Virus record (IMG/VR): IMGVR_UViG_3300044712_001937
Location: 124,001 to 188,000 of that record
Reading direction: 5' to 3' (one strand)
Length of the DNA stretch: 64,000 nucleotides
In this document: positions 20,463 through 62,858 of the stretch, piece by piece
Layout of the letters: every line of letters begins with the position of its first letter
Numbering within the stretch: position 1 is the stretch's first letter
Program-made: the position numbers and the translations under genes
Notes under the pieces: model-generated
Told to the model about the DNA's origin: nothing
The model's database searches: none
Seen by the model: only the letters and a program-made list of their open reading frames with translations

Positions 20463-21176
20463 ATGGAAAAATGGAATGAAAATTCGATAAATTTATTACT
20501 TAAATATTTTAATGAAAATAAATCATATGAAGAAATAGCATTATTATTAAATCGAACATATTCTTCAATAAAAAATAAATTAAATAAACTTGGGTATAAA
20601 TTTAGAGATGTTAATCCTGCAATAATTTCTTATAAATGTGAAAATTGTGGAAATGAATTTAATGATAAAACTTCTGTTGAACGAAGATTTTGTTCAAATT
20701 CATGCGCAGCAAAAATTAATAATAAATTAAGGCATAAAATAAGTGATAAAAAATGTTTAAATTGTAATAAAATATTACATTCACATCAAAATAAATATTG
20801 TTCAAATAATTGTTGTACTGAATATCATTGGAAACAAACAATAACTAAAATCGAAAATGGCGATACATCATTTAATGAAAGAATATATAAAAAATATTTA
20901 ATTCATAAACATGGAAACAAATGTATGAAATGTGGTTGGAATGAAATTAATCCTGTAACTAAATTAGTTCCAATACAACTTGAACATAAAGATGGAAATT
21001 CTGATAACCATAATTTAAATAATTTAGAATTATTATGTCCTAATTGTCATTCACTAACTCCAACATTTGGTGCATTAAATAAAGGAAATGGACGTGATGC
21101 ATTAAAAAAGAAAAAATTAATATTCAAAGAAATAAAGTGTGATAATACATGGCAAAGGTCTACCCCGTCACACTAA
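20463..21176 (+). CDS. HNH endonuclease with Zn-finger repeats
   Basis: CENCG..FCSNSC; CMKCG...LEHKDGN..N...LLCPNCH. Confidence 0.88.
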   Translation: MEKWNENSINLLLKYFNENKSYEEIALLLNRTYSSIKNKLNKLGYKFRDVNPAIISYKCENCGNEFNDKTSVERRFCSNSCAAKINNKLRHKISDKKCLNCNKILHSHQNKYCSNNCCTEYHWKQTITKIENGDTSFNERIYKKYLIHKHGNKCMKCGWNEINPVTKLVPIQLEHKDGNSDNHNLNNLELLCPNCHSLTPTFGALNKGNGRDALKKKKLIFKEIKCDNTWQRSTPSH

Positions 21177-21179
21177 AAT

Positions 21180-22068
21180 AAATAACACAGAGGATTCATC
21201 GCTGTAGCAATACAGAGGAAGTTCAACACATCTCCGCAAAAAGTGGGAGGCTCAACGTTAATCGGAGTCGTTAATACCACTGAGGATGCAAGCCATACAG
21301 ATTTAGACGGTGTGCGGGTCTATGATAATCGGGTTGGTGCTTAGATAAATGATGAATTTAAGTTCTTTGATTTTTTATTTCATTATTTATTTTTTATAGT
21401 ATTTATATTTATAATTGAATATTATGAAAAATAAAATTTATTATGTGTATCAATTAATTTCTTCAAATGATGAAATTTTTTACATTGGAAAAGGTTCTGG
21501 TAATAGAATGTATCAGCATGTTAGTATTGCTATGGGTAAATCAATTAGTAGAACAAAAAATCTTAAACTATATAATAAAATAAAGAAAATTATTGATAGT
21601 GGTGGATTTATTAAATGTGAAATTATTTTTAAAAGTGAAAATGAAAATGATTGTTTTAATGAAGAAATAAGACTTATAGAAAAAATAGGTCTTATTAATT
21701 TATGTAATTTAACTATTGGTGGTGAAGGTACTTCGGGATATAAATTATCTGAAGAAACTAAATTAAAAATGTCTTTAGCTAAAAAAGATAAAAAAAGAGA
21801 AAATATAAGTAAAATTCATAAAGAAAATTTATTAAAAAATCCTCAAATTTTTAAAATTGGTCATGATGGTTATTGGAATGGTAAAACATTATCTGAAGAA
21901 ACTAAATTAAAAATGTCTTTAGCTAAAAAAGGTCGTAAATTTTCAAAAGAACATAAAGAAAAAATATCGCAATCATTAAAAGGACGAGAACTTTCAGAAA
22001 CACATAAAAATAATATTAAAAAATCAAAGACTTATTAAAACAGAAAGTTGACTACGCTCATGTTATTT
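21180..22068 (+). ncRNA. rnpB: Minimal RNase P RNA interrupted by a homing-endonuclease insert
   Basis: P1 aaataaca/tgttattt; P2 attcatc/gatgaat; P3 ctgta-gcaa-tacag; GAGGAAGUUCAAC pairing with AACAGAAA-GUUGACU (P4 with bulged U); tagataaat before the P2 3' strand. Confidence 0.85.
21424..22038 (+). CDS. GIY-YIG homing endonuclease with NUMOD3 repeats, inside rnpB
   Basis: YYVYQL...FYIGKGSGNR...NLTIGGEG; LSEETKLKMS twice. Confidence 0.88.
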   Translation: MKNKIYYVYQLISSNDEIFYIGKGSGNRMYQHVSIAMGKSISRTKNLKLYNKIKKIIDSGGFIKCEIIFKSENENDCFNEEIRLIEKIGLINLCNLTIGGEGTSGYKLSEETKLKMSLAKKDKKRENISKIHKENLLKNPQIFKIGHDGYWNGKTLSEETKLKMSLAKKGRKFSKEHKEKISQSLKGRELSETHKNNIKKSKTY

Positions 22069-41511: not shown

Positions 41512-44500
41512 ATGTATTTTATGAATATTTTTAATATTATTAAAGAAGAAATTCAAAACGTTGATGAAACATACCAAAGTGTTAGTGAAATAAAACAATT
41601 AGCATCAGATATTTTGATGAAAACTGCTGAAAAAAATGTTGAGAATTTTAATAATAAACATGTTTTTGATTATTTATATGGTATACATTTAAGTGAAATA
41701 GATACTTATAAATATACTGATTTGGTTGATTTTATAAAAAATATAAATATACAAATTTACTATGTACCTAAAGAAAATAACGGTATATATGGAAATTATT
41801 CAGTTTATAATATTAAATCAAAAAAAGAATTTAATCCTAATGCATCAAGAGAAATTAATGCGTTTTATGATTATCAAGATTTGAAAAATGATATTGATAG
41901 TTACATTAAACAAAATAATGGTATTGATGATAAAATACTATATATTAAAATATTTTATAAATTCTACAATACATTAATACATGAGTTACAACATGCTTAT
42001 GATGATTATCGCAGTAAAACTATGGCTTTTAATACTAAACAAAATAAAAGTTATAGAAATAAATATGATACTGCAGTAAATACGAATCAAAATCAAAATG
42101 AATTGCAATATGATTTAGAGAAAAATAAAGCATATCTTAATTTACCACATGAAATTTGGGCAAGATTTACTCAAGCAGTAACAAAAACATATTTCAGTAC
42201 TGTTGATTTTAAAAGTGATAATACAATTACCAATTTAATGTATCCTATTGACAAAGTTGTTGATAATTTTAAAAGAAATTTTCAAGGATATCATCTCCTA
42301 TCTGATAATATGAAAAAAAAATTACTTAATAAAGTAGTCCAATTTTGGCATTATGAACAGGATAAAATAAATAAAAGAAATAGTGATAAAAATAGTAATG
42401 AAATTAATAGTGATAAACCAATTAGTGAAGCTGCTAAAAATATATCTGATACTGAAATTATAATAGATAAAGGAACTGAATTATTTCATGGAACTATTGA
42501 AGAATTTGAAAAGGAAAAAACAACAGTTGGTGGCTATGATAATATATTTTGGACTACATTAGATTCTTCAATTGCTCAAACATATATTCCACAGTCAAGT
42601 AATATATATACTAATAGTAGTCATTATGCAATGCCAAGTGACGACCCTATGGTTGTTAAAACTCAATTAATAATGGGAATTAATTATGATTATTCAAAAG
42701 CTGAATTTAAAAATCATAGAGCAATTTCATATTTTGAAGCACCTATTTTTCAAGAATATTCAGATAATTATGAAAAAGCAAATAATTTAGCGTATCAGAA
42801 ATATCTCGAAATTGAAAATTTTATAAAAGAAGTTAAAATTAAAGAAACTAATGATACTGTAACCGATGAGGATTATGATAAATGGGGAGTATTACAAGAT
42901 GAATATGATTATTTACTTAAACAATCCAGAGAGCTTAATGTCAGTAAATTTAAAAATGATTTTGTTAACCAAAAGTTTATGGAAATGGGTTATAAACCAA
43001 CTGGAACTGAACACGCTCCAGATAATAATTATAGCTGGAAATTAAAATATGATAATGGTCAAGTACAACCTGCAAATTATAAAGCAAAAGGTAGATTGTT
43101 AATAGTAATTCCACAAAGAGATTTAAAAATATTAGACACTACTGATAGAGGTAATCGTGAAGGTGATTTAACTGATTTGGATTATCATAAACATAATTGG
43201 TTTCAAAGTGCTGAACAACATGGCTATGATGGAATTAAAATTAATGATTTTGCACAAAGTTCAGACCAAGGAAATCTTGGACATACTTCTATCGGTTTAT
43301 TTAAAAATACTTTAAAAGATGTTAAAATTGAAGAAATTGACGCAACTCATAATGATTTAGAACCTCATTTTCAAAGTAGTAATTGGCAATCACCTGAATA
43401 TAAAAAATATAAAGGAATTAATGAAATAATTGATGAAGAATTAGAAAAAATTATTCATATTTACGAAAATCCAGATATTGTTAAAAGTGAAGAAAATAAT
43501 ATTAATATTCATTATAATGACCGTAATGCCTATCCTTTTACAACATTTAAAGATTTTGGTAATAGAGTCTTCATAGGAAAAGAAGGTGGTACACATACTA
43601 CAATTGTTTATTATTATAAAGATGAATTACCTTCTGATGTTATGGATAGAATGAGACTTCATATTGAATATGATGGTAGAATTTTTCTTAATGAAAAAAT
43701 AATTTCATTTTGGCATTATCCTGATGAAGATAATTTTAAAGAAATAATTATAAATCTTGAAAAAGCTTTCTTAAATGATAGACATATGAATGTTAATATT
43801 TGGAATGACCCGAATTATAAAATTGAAGTTAAAAATTCAGATTTAAGTTATAATATTATTCCAATTCAACAATATATTAAATCTGAAAATCCAAGTGAAC
43901 TTGATTATAAACAACATATTATGTCTCCATTACTTAAACAAAAAAAATCAGTTCCTCTTGGCTATGGTTCAAAAAACCCTAAAAATACACCTGAATATAG
44001 AAATATGAGAAGAATAGAATTTCAAAGTGATGAAAGTATTAAACATTTAAATAAAATAATTTCTGAAATGGCTAATATATTAAATGAAGGTATCCCTGTA
44101 TTTCACGGTTCAGATAGAAAATTCTCAACTTTCGATATGTCAAAAATTGGAAGTGGTGATGGAAAAAATTTAGGTGGCTGGGGAATTTATTTTTCAGATA
44201 GCGAAGATGTTAGTAGTCGATATGTAACTTCAAATGGTTTCTTAGGTGAATATGAACTACGCAATGGAAACTATTTCGACTTAGACTCAGCATTAGAAGA
44301 TGGTGAACGTATAATTAGAAGACTTCAACAATTAGGAATAGATGAAAATCAAATTGAAGAATTTCAAAATGACTATGTGGAACAAGCTGAAAATTATGGT
44401 AATATTGATAATAAGCAAGCATATGATTGGCTTTCATATGTATTAGGTGGAGAAAAAGAAGCTTCAATGTTCCTTAAATCTATGGGATATATCGGAAATA

Positions 44501-44574
44501 CGTTTACAGATAAATGGAATAGAGATGCAAGAAATTATGTTGTGTTTGATACAAGTTCAATAATTTATACCTAA
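41512..44574 (+). CDS. Polyvalent protein: zincin HExxH plus two ADP-ribosyltransferase-like domains
   Basis: LIHELQHAYDD...EIWAR; LFHGT...IFWT...AQTY; VFHGS..F..F....IGSGDG...GWGIYFSD...NYVVFD. Confidence 0.7.
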   Translation: MYFMNIFNIIKEEIQNVDETYQSVSEIKQLASDILMKTAEKNVENFNNKHVFDYLYGIHLSEIDTYKYTDLVDFIKNINIQIYYVPKENNGIYGNYSVYNIKSKKEFNPNASREINAFYDYQDLKNDIDSYIKQNNGIDDKILYIKIFYKFYNTLIHELQHAYDDYRSKTMAFNTKQNKSYRNKYDTAVNTNQNQNELQYDLEKNKAYLNLPHEIWARFTQAVTKTYFSTVDFKSDNTITNLMYPIDKVVDNFKRNFQGYHLLSDNMKKKLLNKVVQFWHYEQDKINKRNSDKNSNEINSDKPISEAAKNISDTEIIIDKGTELFHGTIEEFEKEKTTVGGYDNIFWTTLDSSIAQTYIPQSSNIYTNSSHYAMPSDDPMVVKTQLIMGINYDYSKAEFKNHRAISYFEAPIFQEYSDNYEKANNLAYQKYLEIENFIKEVKIKETNDTVTDEDYDKWGVLQDEYDYLLKQSRELNVSKFKNDFVNQKFMEMGYKPTGTEHAPDNNYSWKLKYDNGQVQPANYKAKGRLLIVIPQRDLKILDTTDRGNREGDLTDLDYHKHNWFQSAEQHGYDGIKINDFAQSSDQGNLGHTSIGLFKNTLKDVKIEEIDATHNDLEPHFQSSNWQSPEYKKYKGINEIIDEELEKIIHIYENPDIVKSEENNINIHYNDRNAYPFTTFKDFGNRVFIGKEGGTHTTIVYYYKDELPSDVMDRMRLHIEYDGRIFLNEKIISFWHYPDEDNFKEIIINLEKAFLNDRHMNVNIWNDPNYKIEVKNSDLSYNIIPIQQYIKSENPSELDYKQHIMSPLLKQKKSVPLGYGSKNPKNTPEYRNMRRIEFQSDESIKHLNKIISEMANILNEGIPVFHGSDRKFSTFDMSKIGSGDGKNLGGWGIYFSDSEDVSSRYVTSNGFLGEYELRNGNYFDLDSALEDGERIIRRLQQLGIDENQIEEFQNDYVEQAENYGNIDNKQAYDWLSYVLGGEKEASMFLKSMGYIGNTFTDKWNRDARNYVVFDTSSIIYT

Positions 44575-48823: not shown

Positions 48824-49044
48824 AAAGTGTAAACCATATCATATAATTTAGATATGGTATGGTTTTATATTTGTTTTACTTAAATCAATACTTTAGATTT
48901 AGGAGTTTAACTATCTGATTTTTAATTTTCTAAAAAAATTTTTTAAAAAAAATTTGACTTTATAATTCTAAAGGCAGGAAAATATTCTCAGATTTTAAAA
49001 AAAATTTTCTAAAAAATAATCACTTCTGTGGTACTATGCATGTT

Positions 49045-49120
49045 GCACCCCCAGCCCTAAAAGGGGGTAGGTAGAGGGGGGGAGAGGGGGAGGGATACGG
49101 AGGGGAGTAGTGGTGTGGGT
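49045..49120 (+). other. G-rich island (G-quadruplex potential) in long intergenic region
   Basis: Runs of G5, G7, G5, G3, G4 in an otherwise very AT-rich genome. Confidence 0.7.
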
Positions 49121-49242
49121 TACACACTTCTAATCTTCTGAATCTCGCACAGTTCTAACCCTGTAGCATTTAGATAATAAGAAATAACTCTATGTTGTAG
49201 TATTCATAAGCATTTAGATTAAATTAATAATTATCTAACATG

Positions 49243-54984: not shown

Positions 54985-55042
54985 TTCTCCCTTTTTTAAT
55001 TAAAAAATGTAACAATAATAAAACATTTACGTATAATATAGT

Positions 55043-55082
55043 AGGCAGGGTGAAACTTGGGTGCGGTAATCCGACCCTGCCT
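55043..55082 (+). ncRNA. Small hairpin RNA, copy 1
   Basis: aggcagggt-gaaacttgggtgcggtaatccg-accctgcct directly after ECF promoter. Confidence 0.55.
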
Positions 55083-55211
55083 TTATGTTTGCTTATTTAG
55101 ATTTAGTTTAAATAAAGTTTGTGATAATTTTAATTAAAAAAGTTTATATTTGTATAACAATTTTAATTAAAAAACGTATTACTATATATAAACCAAATAA
55201 AATAAAATATT

Positions 55212-56108
55212 ATGGCAAGGATTAAAAAAGTTAAAATCGGAACAGAAGCACTCACATTAAGTGAATTACTGTTTAAGGTTGAAATGAGGGATAATCCACG
55301 TAGAACAAACAGCGAATATTCAAAAGTCGTTGTAGGTACTATTTTTCAGGATGATTTTAGAGGTGAATTAGAAGTTGATTTAAACTACTGTTCACCACGT
55401 TATGAACTTGTTCCTAACAGTGAAATATTTCCAGAAATCAAACGTGTATTAAACGAAAATGAGGTTGAATATACAGTAACATATTCGCACCTTAATTTTG
55501 CCCGTTTTTACGTTGACTACGTAATAACTGACGCTCGATATGCTTACAGGATTAAAAGCAGTAAAGGCGATATTATTCAACCTATGCTTAGAGTTCAGCA
55601 CTCTTACAATGGTTTAACTAAGTATAAAATCACTTTCGGATATTTCCGTTTGGTTTGTACCAATGGCTTATCTATTCCAGTTCAAGAAATGAACGAATTC
55701 AATTTATGTATCGTTGGTAAACATACTGATTCGATTAAACACTCATTCAAAAAATTGGATGTTATGTTGAAGTTGTTTGTTAACGATGCAAAGCAAATTA
55801 CTGAAAGTATTACAGCTAAATATGAATTACTTGGCGGTCGCATGATTACTAATGTAGAAGACCGTATAACTGAGGTTTTAGAAGCCTCTGGTATCATTGC
55901 AGTTGAAACCAAAGGGTTTAACAGCGTTGAGGATATTAAAACCCGTATAAATAAAGAAACATATTTGTACAATGGGCAAGTAAATGAATGGCTCATTTAT
56001 AATGGAATTAACTCATATATTAATGATGATTCCAGAAATATTGCAGCACCAGAGAAAAGGCAGGAAACTGATAGCAAGGTACTTGAATACATGCTCACTA
56101 CATGTTAA
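55212..56108 (+). CDS. DUF932-family protein
   Basis: YELVPN...HSYNG....ITFG.FRLVCTNGL. Confidence 0.8.
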   Translation: MARIKKVKIGTEALTLSELLFKVEMRDNPRRTNSEYSKVVVGTIFQDDFRGELEVDLNYCSPRYELVPNSEIFPEIKRVLNENEVEYTVTYSHLNFARFYVDYVITDARYAYRIKSSKGDIIQPMLRVQHSYNGLTKYKITFGYFRLVCTNGLSIPVQEMNEFNLCIVGKHTDSIKHSFKKLDVMLKLFVNDAKQITESITAKYELLGGRMITNVEDRITEVLEASGIIAVETKGFNSVEDIKTRINKETYLYNGQVNEWLIYNGINSYINDDSRNIAAPEKRQETDSKVLEYMLTTC

Positions 56109-56397: not shown

Positions 56398-58567
56398 ATG
56401 AAGTACACAAATTATTTAATGAAATGTGACTATGTTAATTGTGAGAAAATTATTAACGATAGTCCTGAATATATGAAACCTATTACTGTTCCAATGTCCA
56501 TTATCGGTGCTGTTGGCGGTTTATGTATCATTGGTGGAATGTTCCCAATGACTTATATTATTGATACATTTCGCAATGTACGCTATCAATATTTAAGATA
56601 TTATAGAAAATCTCACCCATTTAAACAAATTAATTTGAATTGATTTTAATTAAAAACTGTAACATTAACAGTTTTATTTCGTATTATATTGTACAACCAA
56701 ATAAATAATACAACAATGAGAGCAGATATTTTAATCGAAAAATTTGAAAGACAAACAGCAGATTTATTAAATAAACAAACTGTTGAGATATTCAAAGAAC
56801 TGGTTTTATTATTTGGAGAAATGAAACAAGTTCAACCAAATTTAAAACGTTTATATATTGGTATGGGAACATACGCAATTGATGGTGATTATATTGTCGA
56901 ATATAATGATTTCGAAGACGAAAGTAATACCGATGAGATTATTGGTAAAATTGATGAAGAACTTGTAAGATACAAAGGTTTAGCCAAAAATAGCGATTTT
57001 TCTGAACAAATTAATGATTGTATTAATAATGATAATAATGCTATTTTTAACGCTTCAAACCATATGAATGAGGCATGTATTGAATTCGTTAAACTTTGTA
57101 ATTATATTCAAGAAATTAAAATGACTACATTATTTTCTGGTGTTAACGAAAATGGTGTGATTGTTGATTATGGTGCTGGTTCGCATTTAGATACTTATAT
57201 TGATGCTGTTGAAAGTTCAGAGGTTGAACTACTTGTTAAGAATAAAATTCCAATAATATTTCATCAAACACATTCAGAAGAGTATTATAAATATACTCAC
57301 CTAAAAGACTGATTTTAATTAAAAACCTTGCAACAATTGTGAGGTTTTTTCGTATATAAATGTACAACCAATAATTAAGACAATGACAAAGAAAGCATTT
57401 ATCGAATTAGCAAGCTATCACCAATACGGTAAACGTAATGAACGTGGTTTTATAGCTTTGTTCTTTGATTGGATGAGAGGTGATGATGGCGTTGGTTATA
57501 AATATTGTGTTTATGCCAGAGCTTTAAACTCAACAAAGAAAGAACTTATTGATGCATTATATAATGCAATTACCAAAGATGAGGATACTCCTTGGTATGT
57601 TCAAACAATTATTGCACAGGAAAATAAACAAAGATTTAAAGTTCCTATTGTTGCGAGTGGTTTATTTAATCTAATTAAACATAACTAATAGATTTAAACC
57701 TGCTTAGGCAGGTTTTTCTTTTTATAAAAAGAATGATATTTCTTATGTAATATTTTTATACGTTAGTCAACAATAAAAAACATTTATTAATTTCTTATGT
57801 ATATTTGTGGTATGTATATTAAACCTCATTAGTCTCATGGATAAATTATATGTTATAAATAAGAAACATTTAGATGATTTTAAAGGTTATACCGGAGAAT
57901 TAGTTATCATTGTTCATATACATAGTTTAGGGCATTGTACTATTGAAAGTACTTTAACAGGTCGATTATGGTATGCTGATATTGAGAATGATTTAGTTGA
58001 GGCTATTGAAGCTCAAAATAAAGAAGAAATATTTGAAGAAGTTTTGCAACAATTATTTTAATATATCGTATTATAATGTACAAAGATGTTAAACTAATAC
58101 ATATATAAAATGTGTAAAAATAATAAAGTTCAGCACAGATGGGAATCAATGAAAACTGAAAACCCAGCATTGTACAAGTTACTCAAAAGTAAAGTAAATA
58201 AGAAATAAGGTTGTCTATATTGTTATTTGGTTGTAGTCCTCCTGCTTGTCACAGGAGGATTTTTTTGTTTATATCTGTAACATTTTTAATTAAAATTCGT
58301 ATTACTATATACAAACCAATAATAAAGACAATGATTATTAAACCTGAAATTAAATATAAAGAATTTACTGTTTATCCTGATAACTATTTTGGATATTCCC
58401 TTTATGATAGAAATGGTAAATGGTGTCAATCTGCTACTAATATTGAATCATTAAAAGGTTCAGTAGAATGCATACTTTTAGCTGATATTGAATTAACACC
58501 TAATGAATATTGGAAAAGAAAAAATGCAATATTGAAAAAATATAACTTAATTTCTTGTAACAATTAA
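56398..58567 (+). CDS. Several hypothetical genes (56398-56643, 56716-57312, 57383-57688, 57837-58061, 58330-58567)
   Basis: ORFs, most behind ECF-type promoters. Confidence 0.6.
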
Positions 58568-58762
58568 AAACAAATTTCGTATATTTACATATCAGAAGCG
58601 ATTAAGAATCTGCTTCAAAACAAAGTAACTGGATTATAAACTTAAAATGCCAGAATTATGAAAAATGCCGTAAATTTAGCAGCTCCCACGAGGGGTACTC
58701 CCAAGTAGAAAAACTATATAATAATAATTAAATTCCGAATAAATAATAATTAGAAAGAAAAT

Positions 58763-59054
58763 AACTGTTCAGGATAAACCAAAAATAACTAAAAGATATG
58801 AAATCCTTGCAAGGTTAGTCTTTTTGGTTTTGACTACACAATCCGCACGCTTGGCTGTCTATATATTAAATGACTGCCTGTGCACCATATGAATGCCCGC
58901 CTTACGCTTATCCCTCCCGCATCCCTAACGGCTTGCAGGTGGCAACAGCGAGGCTGCAAAACTTGTCCGGATACATACACGGTGCGATAATATACCGCAA
59001 ACGATGGAGTAATCATTCCGGATGCCCGTAAATCAGTCAAATTCCTGAACAGTT
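58763..59054 (+). ncRNA. About 290-nt GC-rich structured RNA candidate
   Basis: 12-bp closing stem aactgttcagga/tcctgaacagtt with nested stems; promoter at 58556; terminator 59057-59091. Confidence 0.65.
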
Positions 59055-59156
59055 TTAGTCCCCTGACCATCGTGTGTGAGGGGATTTTTTTGTTTATATC
59101 TGTAACATTTTTAATTAAAATTCGTATACTAATATACAACCAATAAAAATAAGACA

Positions 59157-59960
59157 ATGAAAGAATTTAAATCAATCGCTAATGCAAAGAAATTAACTAA
59201 ACTTACTTATTTAGGTGATGTTAATAAAAGCGCAAAATTAGCTAAAAATGGTAAAATTTCACACCAAATGACTTATGGAATTTACCTTGCTCCTGCAAAT
59301 GTTTCAGGTTATAATACCTGTCCTTTCTCTACTCCTGAATGCCGTAAAGGTTGTTTAGCCACATCCGGTCGTGCTGGTATGGAAATAATGGCAGGTAAAA
59401 CCAAAATTGAAAATTGTAGAACTACAAAAACAAAATTATTTTACGAAAATAATGAGTTTTTTATGCAATGGTTAATTGCTGAAATGCTAAACCATAAAAC
59501 CAATGCTGAAAAAAATGGTTACGGTTTTTCTGCCCGTTTAAATTGCACCAGTGATATTGACTGGCAAAATACCTATTATAATGGTAAAAATATCTTTGAG
59601 ATATTTCCTGACGTTCAATTCTACGATTATACAAAGAACCCTAACAAGTTCAATAATAAGCCTTTAAACTATCATTTAACTTTCTCATATACAGGTAAAA
59701 ACTGGGTTAAATGTAAAGAGTTACTTGAAGTTGGTTATAATATCTCAATGATATTCAACGTAAAAGACGAAAACTTATTTCCAAAAACATTTGGCGGTTA
59801 TGAAGTTGTTAACGGTGACAAAACAGATTATAGGGTTAACGATGGCAATGGTAAGATAATTGGTTTGAAATTTAAACGTATTGCTGACCAATTGGCACAA
59901 AAAGAAGTTATCAATAGTTGTTTTGTAGTTCAACCAGATAACGAACTTTGCCAGTTTTAA
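59157..59960 (+). CDS. GP88-family protein
   Basis: LAPA..SGYNTCP..TPEC..GCL..SGR; RLNCTSDI; FYDYTK; YHLTFS; GD.TD.R. Confidence 0.8.
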   Translation: MKEFKSIANAKKLTKLTYLGDVNKSAKLAKNGKISHQMTYGIYLAPANVSGYNTCPFSTPECRKGCLATSGRAGMEIMAGKTKIENCRTTKTKLFYENNEFFMQWLIAEMLNHKTNAEKNGYGFSARLNCTSDIDWQNTYYNGKNIFEIFPDVQFYDYTKNPNKFNNKPLNYHLTFSYTGKNWVKCKELLEVGYNISMIFNVKDENLFPKTFGGYEVVNGDKTDYRVNDGNGKIIGLKFKRIADQLAQKEVINSCFVVQPDNELCQF

Positions 59961-61891: not shown

Positions 61892-61961
61892 TTTAAAATT
61901 TAATATTTTTATTGTATTTATATAAAATAATTATTATTTTTACTTAATTAAATTTTATAAT

Positions 61962-62153
61962 ATGAAAAAAGTTCTCATTATTTCAGCATTAATTGCATGT
62001 ATGAGTTTTAGTTTTTCTCAAACTAATGCTCAATGTATTGTAACAAAAGTTGATGGTGTAAACCCAACTTCCTTGTATCCAGAACCGCCTCCAGATATTC
62101 CGCCTGAAGGCGGACCTGGCCCTGATACTGGCGGTCCTGGAAATCCAAAATAA
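61962..62153 (+). CDS. Small secreted peptide with Pro/Gly-rich tail
   Basis: Signal peptide MKKVLIISALIACMSFS; PEPPPDIPPEGGPGP. Confidence 0.6.
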   Translation: MKKVLIISALIACMSFSFSQTNAQCIVTKVDGVNPTSLYPEPPPDIPPEGGPGPDTGGPGNPK

Positions 62154-62266
62154 GGAGTTTAAAACTCCGGAATGTTCTATGAATGTTCCGGAGTTTTTAT
62201 TTAAACTGATTAGTAATGATATTTATTAAATTCTTTTTTTAAGTATGTATATAAAATACTGGAATT

Positions 62267-62611: not shown

Positions 62612-62643
62612 AACATTTTTATTTAAAATCCGTATACATAATT

Positions 62644-62682
62644 GTCAGGGTTATACTTGGGTGAAGTAATCCAACCCTGCCT
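62644..62682 (+). ncRNA. Small hairpin RNA, copy 2
   Basis: cagggt-tatacttgggtgaagtaatcca-accctg after TGAAAC-N16-CGTA. Confidence 0.5.
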
Positions 62683-62858
62683 TATATTTTAACTTTAGAA
62701 TAATTCTAAATTAGGTAGGTAGACTACTGATAATACAATCTATTTAATGAAACCATTGTACATATTTTAATTAATACCATTGTACGGTTATATTTTTTGG
62801 TTTATCTGTAACAATTTATTCTTACTCTCGTATCATACACTAACCAATAAATATTATT

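What the first reader, a model, noticed from the sequence alone, without database searches (positions are those of the whole stretch)
58590..59091. Independent transcription unit encoding a large GC-rich structured RNA
Seen: promoter (58556) and terminator (59057-59091) enclose about 500 nt with no credible long ORF. There is a 12-bp closing stem 58763-74/59043-54, nested ttgact/agtcaa and atccg/cggat pairings, several hairpins and a C-rich loop. GC content is far above background. A short ORF MKNAVNLAAPTRGTPK (58658-58708, TAG stop) precedes it. I do not recognise the family. Inference: a novel large phage ncRNA.
Basis: partly seen in the sequence, partly recalled or inferred. Interest (0 to 1): 0.72.

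Follow-up and report, generated by a model that had tools for sequence, protein, structure and literature searches.

The report
Orphan structured RNA candidate, jumbo phage
A 365-kb T4-like jumbo phage carries a roughly 500-base unit with its own promoter and terminator and no credible gene; its GC-rich 290-base core looks like a folded RNA, but no relative was found anywhere, so neither the fold nor a function could be confirmed.

Summary
A phage early-type promoter (58556-58585) and an intrinsic terminator (59057-59091) enclose about 500 nt with no credible ORF. The 3' 290 nt (58763-59054) are 53% GC in a 26% GC genome and fold into a multi-branched structure closed by a perfect 12-bp stem.

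No Rfam family matches. I also found no homologue: not in about 48 related jumbo-phage records (BLAST and a covariance model), not in IMG/VR, JGI metagenomes or GenBank phages, and not through protein searches with the spurious ORFs. Covariation therefore cannot be tested, and no RNA-seq run was listed.

The thermodynamic signal is only moderate. The core ranks 16th of 318 windows by z-score and 2nd by raw energy. Only 2 of 84 predicted pairs are G-U, so the fold does not tell the strands apart.

The unit and an orphan 78-aa gene sit in an 839-bp cassette bounded by near-identical terminator+promoter modules, like the PeSL shuffling cassettes of T4-type phages. In three full-length relatives the same slot upstream of the GP88 gene holds a different, roughly 80-nt conserved unit.

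Best reading: a strain-specific, early-transcribed structured ncRNA of unknown function. It is plausible but unproven, and of moderate interest.

The parts
58235..58261 (+). Intrinsic terminator of the upstream module (left cassette boundary)
   Evidence: Called by the scan tool: 10-bp stem followed by a T-run.
58276..58302 (+). Phage early-type promoter motif driving the 78-aa ORF
   Evidence: Exact match to TGTAACA-N13-TTCGTAT. ATG lies 28 nt downstream, with an ACAAACCAATA leader.
58331..58567 (+). Orphan 78-aa ORF in the same cassette. Its stop codon lies inside the RNA unit's promoter, so its mRNA would read into the RNA unit.
   Evidence: ORF list. Only itself found among 5.8 billion proteins. 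No Pfam or PHROG match. One AF2 model at pLDDT 82, with no fold match.
58556..58585 (+). Promoter of the RNA unit (-35 GTAACA 58557-62, -10 TATATT 58580-85). Start of transcription inferred near 58592.
   Evidence: Exact motif match and sigma-70-type call. One of only 4 of the 21 + strand motifs in the window with no ORF behind it.
58595..58616 (+). Predicted 5' hairpin at the start of the transcript
   Evidence: Folds.
58610..58702 (+). 5' segment shared at 93% (6 differences in 93 nt) with a short contig from a freshwater metagenome. It covers most of the 16-codon ORF (58658-58708).
   Evidence: read-laying run X5, record 25. The neighbouring 78-aa gene matches X5 only at about 80%.
58763..59054 (+). 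GC-rich core. P1 is 58763-74/59043-54 (12 bp). An AT-rich hairpin spans 58777-58829. P3 is 58830-35/59035-40. Three inner hairpins span 58845-58883, 58894-58958 (C-rich) and 58965-59023.
   Evidence: MFE -84.4 kcal/mol, z -4.4. Helix list with pair probabilities 0.7-1.0. GC 43-54%.
59057..59091 (+). Intrinsic terminator of the unit (right cassette boundary)
   Evidence: Fold. 45 nt identical to the module at 58255-58302.
59101..59127 (+). Promoter of the downstream GP88-family gene (59157-59960)
   Evidence: Exact motif. Pfam PF17338, E 1.7e-34.

Best explanation
The unit is a strain-specific gene for a structured non-coding RNA, carried as cargo in a PeSL-type shuffling cassette in the early, hyperplastic region of a T4-like jumbo phage.

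Proposed mechanism:
1. Host RNA polymerase starts at the early-type promoter near 58592. It may also read in from the 78-aa gene upstream.
2. It transcribes an AT-rich 5' part of about 170 nt and then the 290-nt GC-rich core, and stops at the terminator at 59091.
3. The core folds into a multi-helix domain closed by a 12-bp stem, which should make it long-lived.
4. I infer that it acts in trans early in infection by binding a host or phage protein as a decoy or scaffold. That is the usual role of accessory cargo in such regions (host takeover or counter-defence).

Shown: promoter, terminator, lack of coding capacity, GC island, predicted fold, cassette boundaries, absence from relatives.
Inferred: transcription, stability, trans action and the binding partner.
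For: - The promoter belongs to a motif 19-fold enriched in the window. In 17 of 21 cases an ATG ORF follows it 19-45 nt downstream. This copy has neither an ORF nor the usual ACAACCAATA leader.
- The terminator is + strand only.
- It is the largest non-coding GC island in a 26% GC genome. Most other non-coding islands are tRNA clusters. This is the signal used by GC-rich-intergenic-region ncRNA screens (PMC6429828, PMC8632094).
- The fold is second of 318 windows by energy, with z -4.4.
- No protein homology in any frame tested.
- The cassette assembles as its own 839-nt contig, at depth 4.9 against 6.2 and 5.3 for the flanks.
- All neighbouring genes are on the + strand.
Against: - No homologue, so no covariation.
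- No RNA-seq evidence.
- By z-score the core is only in the top 5% of windows.
- Only 2 G-U pairs in 84, and long perfect helices. This looks more like a young or DNA-level palindrome than an old RNA.
- Absent from every relative, so it is dispensable.
- The proposed function rests on context alone.
Confidence: 0.5

Rival explanations
1. The core is a piece of foreign or selfish DNA, such as a MITE-like palindromic insert or a captured fragment from a GC-richer genome. It landed in a shuffling cassette and has no RNA function. It is transcribed only because the cassette supplies a promoter and a terminator.
For: - GC is twice the genome mean.
- The terminal inverted repeat totals 18 bp (12 + 6); the fold is almost all Watson-Crick.
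- Single copy, absent from all relatives.
- Lies in a region built for gene turnover.
Against: - No target-site duplication at the ends.
- No second copy in the phage.
- No match in JGI metagenomes beyond chance 19-mers, and the sequence is present only in 4 rhizosphere runs.
- The interior is a branched set of hairpins rather than one long hairpin.
- It has a dedicated promoter in addition to the cassette's own.
Confidence: 0.2
2. The unit acts in cis. It is the structured 3' untranslated region of the 78-aa gene's mRNA, and/or the carrier of the 16-codon ORF. It protects that mRNA from 3' decay or regulates it, rather than acting as a free RNA.
For: - The 78-aa ORF's stop codon lies inside the unit's promoter, and no terminator separates them. 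Read-through is therefore expected.
- The 5' segment with the short ORF is better conserved in run X5 (93%) than the gene beside it (about 80%).
Against: - A separate full-consensus promoter stands directly in front of the unit.
- 290 nt of complex fold is far more than a 3' stabiliser needs.
- The 16-codon ORF lacks the leader seen before real genes here.
Confidence: 0.12
3. It is a replication origin of the T4 oriF/oriG type: a promoter followed by an AT-rich unwinding stretch, whose transcript stays as an R-loop and primes DNA synthesis.
For: The promoter is followed by about 170 bp at 20-35% GC. The phage is T4-like by terminase. The origin architecture is from established knowledge of T4, not tested here.
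Against: - The RNA-like strand of the core is C-rich (GC skew -0.2), which disfavours a stable R-loop.
- Cumulative GC skew does not turn here.
- The element is missing from relatives that must also replicate.
Confidence: 0.05
4. It encodes a small protein: the 53-aa + strand ORF at 58870-59031, or the 107-aa - strand frame.
For: Open frames exist.
Against: - No Pfam match.
- No candidate among 5.8 billion proteins.
- Among 1.84 billion cluster representatives, only translations of tandem repeats were hit.
- Composition is unlike every gene of the phage.
- The - strand frame runs through a terminator and a promoter.
- By my own estimate from base composition, not a tool result, an open frame this long in 53% GC sequence has roughly a 0.15 chance.
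Confidence: 0.03

Closest known systems
GOLLD and ROOL large structured RNAs of phages and prophages (Rfam)
   Same: Large, complex-folded, non-coding, phage-borne, function long unknown. Found in AT-rich contexts, often in genomes with many tRNA genes.
   Different: No covariance-model match even at E 10. About 290 nt of core, against roughly 580-800 nt. A single known copy rather than a family.
PeSL (promoter-early stem-loop) cassettes of T4-type phages (PMC2839356, PMC4122927)
   Same: Composite terminator + early promoter modules bound variable cargo in hyperplastic regions. Here two modules share 45 identical bases, and assemblies break exactly there.
   Different: Described PeSL cargo is protein-coding ORFs. 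Here the cargo includes a probable RNA gene. The motif sequence differs, and the phage is only distantly T4-like (27% terminase identity).
GC-rich intergenic-region ncRNA candidates from single-genome screens (PMC6429828, PMC8632094, PMC11109978)
   Same: Same discovery signal: a long, GC-rich non-coding stretch in an AT-rich genome.
   Different: Those candidates are accepted only after homologues show covariation.
Conserved ~80-nt promoter-driven unit of this phage clade (window 55040-55118 and 62640-62716; model R2)
   Same: It is driven by the same promoter type and has no ORF. In relatives G002, G003 and G004 it sits immediately upstream of the GP88 gene, the slot where the target sits in this phage.
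   Different: Model R2 does not hit the target. Only short shared strings such as GGTGCG.TAAT and AGTAATC are seen. The size differs about six-fold.

Membership tests
Any Rfam 15 family (including GOLLD, ROOL, HEARO, tmRNA, RNase P, 6S, SRP, group I intron, ribozymes) | Covariance-model score at or above the family's gathering threshold | tested here: not met
   No hit at gathering. At E up to 10, the only hits on the unit are two terminator-driven chance matches, greA leader at 20.5 bits and fstAT at 19.1 bits. ARAGORN finds no tRNA or tmRNA.
Retron msr-msd RNA | A reverse transcriptase gene next to the RNA | tested here: not met
   No RVT_1 match anywhere in the 365-kb genome. The downstream gene is GP88.
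Retron msr-msd RNA | Terminal inverted repeats (a1/a2) closing the RNA | tested here: inconclusive
   A 12-bp closing stem exists, but this is not specific to retrons.
tracrRNA of the phage's own Cas12f/TnpB-like CRISPR locus | An anti-repeat complementary to the CRISPR repeat | tested here: not met
   Best duplex -12.7 kcal/mol, weaker than shuffled repeats (mean -15.4). No BLAST anti-repeat in the unit. The locus is 36 kb away.
omega-RNA / reRNA of TnpB or IscB | Overlaps or abuts the nuclease gene, with a guide at one end | tested here: not met
   Neighbours are an orphan 78-aa ORF and GP88. TnpB-like genes lie at G000 144.5 kb and 217.4 kb. The 3' end of the unit is a terminator, with no room for a guide.
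PeSL-bounded cassette of T4-type phages | Near-identical terminator + early promoter modules on both sides of variable cargo | tested here: met
   Modules at 58235-58302 and 59057-59127 share 45 identical bases. The cassette is its own assembly contig, 58273-59111.
PeSL-bounded cassette of T4-type phages | Alternative cargo between the same modules in related genomes | tested here: inconclusive
   One contig in run X1 joins module-like sequence with 1044 other bases between. It may come from another place in the genome.
MITE-like mobile repeat | Terminal inverted repeats, target-site duplication and many copies | tested here: not met
   Inverted repeat present. No duplication at the ends. Single copy in the phage. 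Copies in the unknown host could not be searched.
Validated structured ncRNA class (GC-rich IGR route) | Covariation in homologues supporting the helices | not testable with these tools
   No homologue found by any route.
Clade-specific ~80-nt unit (model R2) | Match to the covariance model built from 6 copies | tested here: not met
   R2 finds 2 strong copies in G000 (E 8e-20 and 6e-17), neither of them in 58583-59095.

The most novel reading that the evidence does not exclude
The core is the first seen member of a new class of large structured phage RNAs. Such RNAs would travel as cargo of promoter-terminator shuffling cassettes and act early in infection as a protein-binding decoy against a host defence or takeover target. 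Less likely, it is a trans-acting RNA partner of one of this phage's own TnpB/Cas12-like proteins.
Probability: 0.1. Interest if true: 0.75.

Novelty: new member of a known kind. Interest (0 to 1): 0.38.

Why it matters
If real, it adds an RNA gene to the accessory cargo that T4-like jumbo phages swap through promoter-terminator cassettes. It would also be one more complex-folded phage RNA with unknown biochemistry, like GOLLD and ROOL before their structures were solved.

As it stands it is a single-genome candidate from an uncultured phage. Its value is as a lead for wider covariance-model searches and for probing. It is not a finding in itself.

Tried and rejected
Homologue hunts that found nothing:
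- blastn (distant mode) against 50,697 GenBank phages.
- BLAST of the core and of the 5' part against four near-complete relatives.
- Covariance model R1 (core, 215 positions) against 48 related records. The only hits, at 4.7-11.7 bits, fell in a coding region and a short hairpin.
- Low-stringency BLAST against 83 loci carrying the GP88 neighbour.
- Exact-seed scans of IMG/VR with three seeds. Only chance hits in GC-rich or coding DNA.
- A 19-mer scan of JGI metagenomes. Nine chance hits, none extending beyond 23 nt.
- Using the spurious 107-aa and 53-aa ORFs as probes for conserved loci. Only translations of tandem repeats were returned.
- The 78-aa neighbour as an anchor. It is an orphan.

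Other tests that led nowhere or were rejected:
- A search for RNA runs listed none.
- The read layout gave no sequence variants in the unit.
- Host inference through the terminase hit only a relative phage mis-binned as a Paceibacterota MAG.
- Rejected identities: tmRNA or tRNA-like; retron; Ro/Y-RNA system (no TROVE protein); tracrRNA; paralogy with the other GC-rich non-coding islands of the genome.
- Structure prediction of the 78-aa protein gave no fold match.
- A 13-mer of the P1 arm recurs in a small membrane-protein ORF, and an 18-mer of the 5' part in another gene. Both are same-sense and look like chance.

Full report
**Setting.** The window is bases 124001-188000 of a 364,702-bp viral record with direct terminal repeats. 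The genome is 26.3% GC. It is held almost intact by four rhizosphere metagenome runs. Its large terminase is most like those of T4-type myoviruses; the nearest cultured phage is a Flavobacterium phage at 27% identity. About 80 IMG/VR contigs carry terminases 50-100% identical, four of them 246-363 kb long. The window holds 21 tRNA genes.

**Observation.**
- The promoter is not a loose consensus match. TGTAACA-N13-TTCGTAT occurs 22 times in the window at up to 2 mismatches, against 1.2 expected. It occurs 61 times genome-wide, concentrated at 160-240 kb.
- The motif reads as -35 GTAACA, a 17-nt spacer and a TATAAT-like -10.
- Of the 21 + strand copies in the window, 17 are followed 19-45 nt later by an ATG ORF, often with an ACAA(A)CCAATA leader. 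Four are not. One of the four is the copy at 58556-58582. Two others (55008, 62609) precede a conserved 80-nt unit described below.
- The terminator at 59057-59091 is an 8-bp stem running into a 7-U tract. It is oriented for the + strand only.
- All genes from 55.2 to 63.7 kb are on the + strand.

**The core.**
- Region 58763-59054 reaches 52-54% GC.
- Of the genome's windows of 150 nt with at least 47% GC, three lie in large ORFs and most of the rest are tRNA clusters. This is the longest non-coding one without an Rfam name.
- The predicted fold has 84 pairs at -84.4 kcal/mol: P1 (12 bp), an AT-rich hairpin, P3 (6 bp) and three inner hairpins. Pair probabilities are mostly above 0.85.

**How far beyond chance.**
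- The z-score against dinucleotide shuffles is -4.4.
- I scanned 318 windows of 300 nt the same way. Their mean z is -1.3, and 5% reach -4.4. The core ranks 16th by z and 2nd by raw energy, while true tRNA clusters score only -0.3 to -4. Folding energy supports the claim but does not prove it.
- Perfect inverted repeats of 12 bp or more number 115 in this genome, but only two have arms of at least 40% GC.
- Only 2 of the 84 pairs are G-U. The fold therefore forms equally well on the other strand or in DNA. Strand assignment rests on the promoter and terminator.

**Known families.**
- Rfam 15 gives nothing at gathering thresholds. At E up to 10, the only hits on the unit are terminator-driven chance matches.
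- ARAGORN finds no tRNA or tmRNA.
- The genome has no reverse transcriptase and no TROVE protein, which argues against a retron or a Ro/Y-RNA system.
- It does encode a 482-aa TnpB/Cas12f-like protein followed by a six-repeat CRISPR array, 36 kb away. The unit has no anti-repeat to that array.

**Homologues.** None were found.
- The routes were GenBank phages, four near-complete relatives by BLAST, 48 related records by covariance model R1, loci around 83 GP88 homologues, exact seeds in IMG/VR and in JGI metagenomes, and protein-space searches with the spurious ORFs.
- The 31-mer index of public runs lists only the four rhizosphere runs and one freshwater run.
- When laid, the freshwater run shares only 58610-58702, at 93%, plus weaker pieces of the neighbouring genes. 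It shows nothing over the core, although its contigs are 151-nt fragments, so a gap proves little.
- Covariation therefore cannot be assessed. No RNA run was listed.

**Context.**
- The unit and an orphan 78-aa gene lie between two modules, each a terminator followed by an early promoter and leader. The modules share 45 identical bases.
- Assemblies of the rhizosphere runs break at exactly these modules. The interval 58273-59111 is its own 839-nt contig, at depth 4.9 against 6.2 and 5.3 for the flanks.
- This is the architecture described for PeSL cassettes, which mediate gene shuffling in the hyperplastic regions of T4-type phages (PMC2839356, PMC4122927).
- The 78-aa ORF's stop codon lies within the unit's promoter and no terminator intervenes. 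Read-through from that gene is therefore expected.
- The downstream GP88-family gene is conserved at 56-61% in relatives G002-G004. There, the slot just upstream holds a different promoter-driven unit of about 80 nt.
- That unit has two copies in this window (55040-55118, 62640-62716) and 13 hits across the loci searched. Its model does not hit the target, and its own helices show little covariation.

**Interpretation.**
- The most economical reading is a strain-specific, early-transcribed structured ncRNA carried as cassette cargo. I give it about 0.5.
- The function is inferred from context only: accessory early-region cargo, hence probably a trans-acting protein-binding RNA in takeover or counter-defence.
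- The main rival is inert or selfish foreign DNA that happens to sit in a transcribed cassette (0.2). It is favoured by the near-perfect Watson-Crick helices, the foreign composition and the absence from relatives.
- A cis role as the 3' part of the 78-aa mRNA (0.12), a T4-type origin (0.05) and a small protein (0.03) are less likely, for the reasons given under rivals.

**Verdict.** The candidate is of moderate interest and needs wider homologue searches or transcript data.

Noticed in passing
G000:C1:217417-219451 (outside the window; locus L200 304-2340): A 482-aa TnpB/Cas12f-like ORF (PF07282 E 6e-18, plus OrfB_IS605) is followed by a CRISPR array of six exact 36-nt repeats (GTTGTAAACAACCACAAATTGAAAGGTACTTACAAC) with spacers of about 30 nt. 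This looks like a compact phage-borne type V-like system. A 96-nt partial tmRNA-like (tRNA-like domain) match at 31 bits follows the array.
   Followed up: partly
window 20463-21345: A 237-aa ORF with a weak TnpB zinc-ribbon match and an HTH is followed directly by a 185-nt GC-rich non-coding island (21160-21345) with no Rfam match. It may be a guide or omega-like RNA.
   Followed up: no
window 55040-55118 and 62640-62716; relatives L091, L092, L093, L214-L221: A conserved promoter-driven unit of about 80 nt without an ORF (invariant GTAATCC, then the hairpin TTTAGAAT.ATTCTAAAT). It has 2-3 strong copies (E below 1e-6) in each of the four full-length genomes G000 and G002-G004, and the sequence pattern occurs in 8 IMG/VR contigs. 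It sits just upstream of the GP88 gene in relatives. There is no Rfam match, and covariation is weak.
   Followed up: partly
window 49030-49170; relative L116 150-260: A G-rich non-coding island (GGGGGAGAGGGGGAGGG...) in an AT-rich intergenic stretch. A similar G-rich island is seen in a relative.
   Followed up: no
G000:C1:278100-278550 (L102 500-950): A non-coding stretch of about 450 nt with moderately raised GC and no ORF of 80 aa or more over its GC-rich core (278140-278293). No Rfam match at E 0.1.
   Followed up: no
locus L211 (GenBank JBAZIW010000001.1, 362,763 bp): A relative of this phage, the same record as IMG/VR G003, is deposited as a 'Candidatus Paceibacterota' MAG scaffold. This is probably a binning error rather than host evidence.
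   Followed up: no
window 41512-44574 and 55212-56108: A 1020-aa protein with an ART-PolyVal ADP-ribosyltransferase domain and a DUF932 protein lie in the same early region. This fits an accessory or counter-defence neighbourhood.
   Followed up: no
window 61960-62259: The strongest folding z-score in the window (-7.6) falls here. It spans a small proline-rich secreted-type ORF and its terminator.
   Followed up: no
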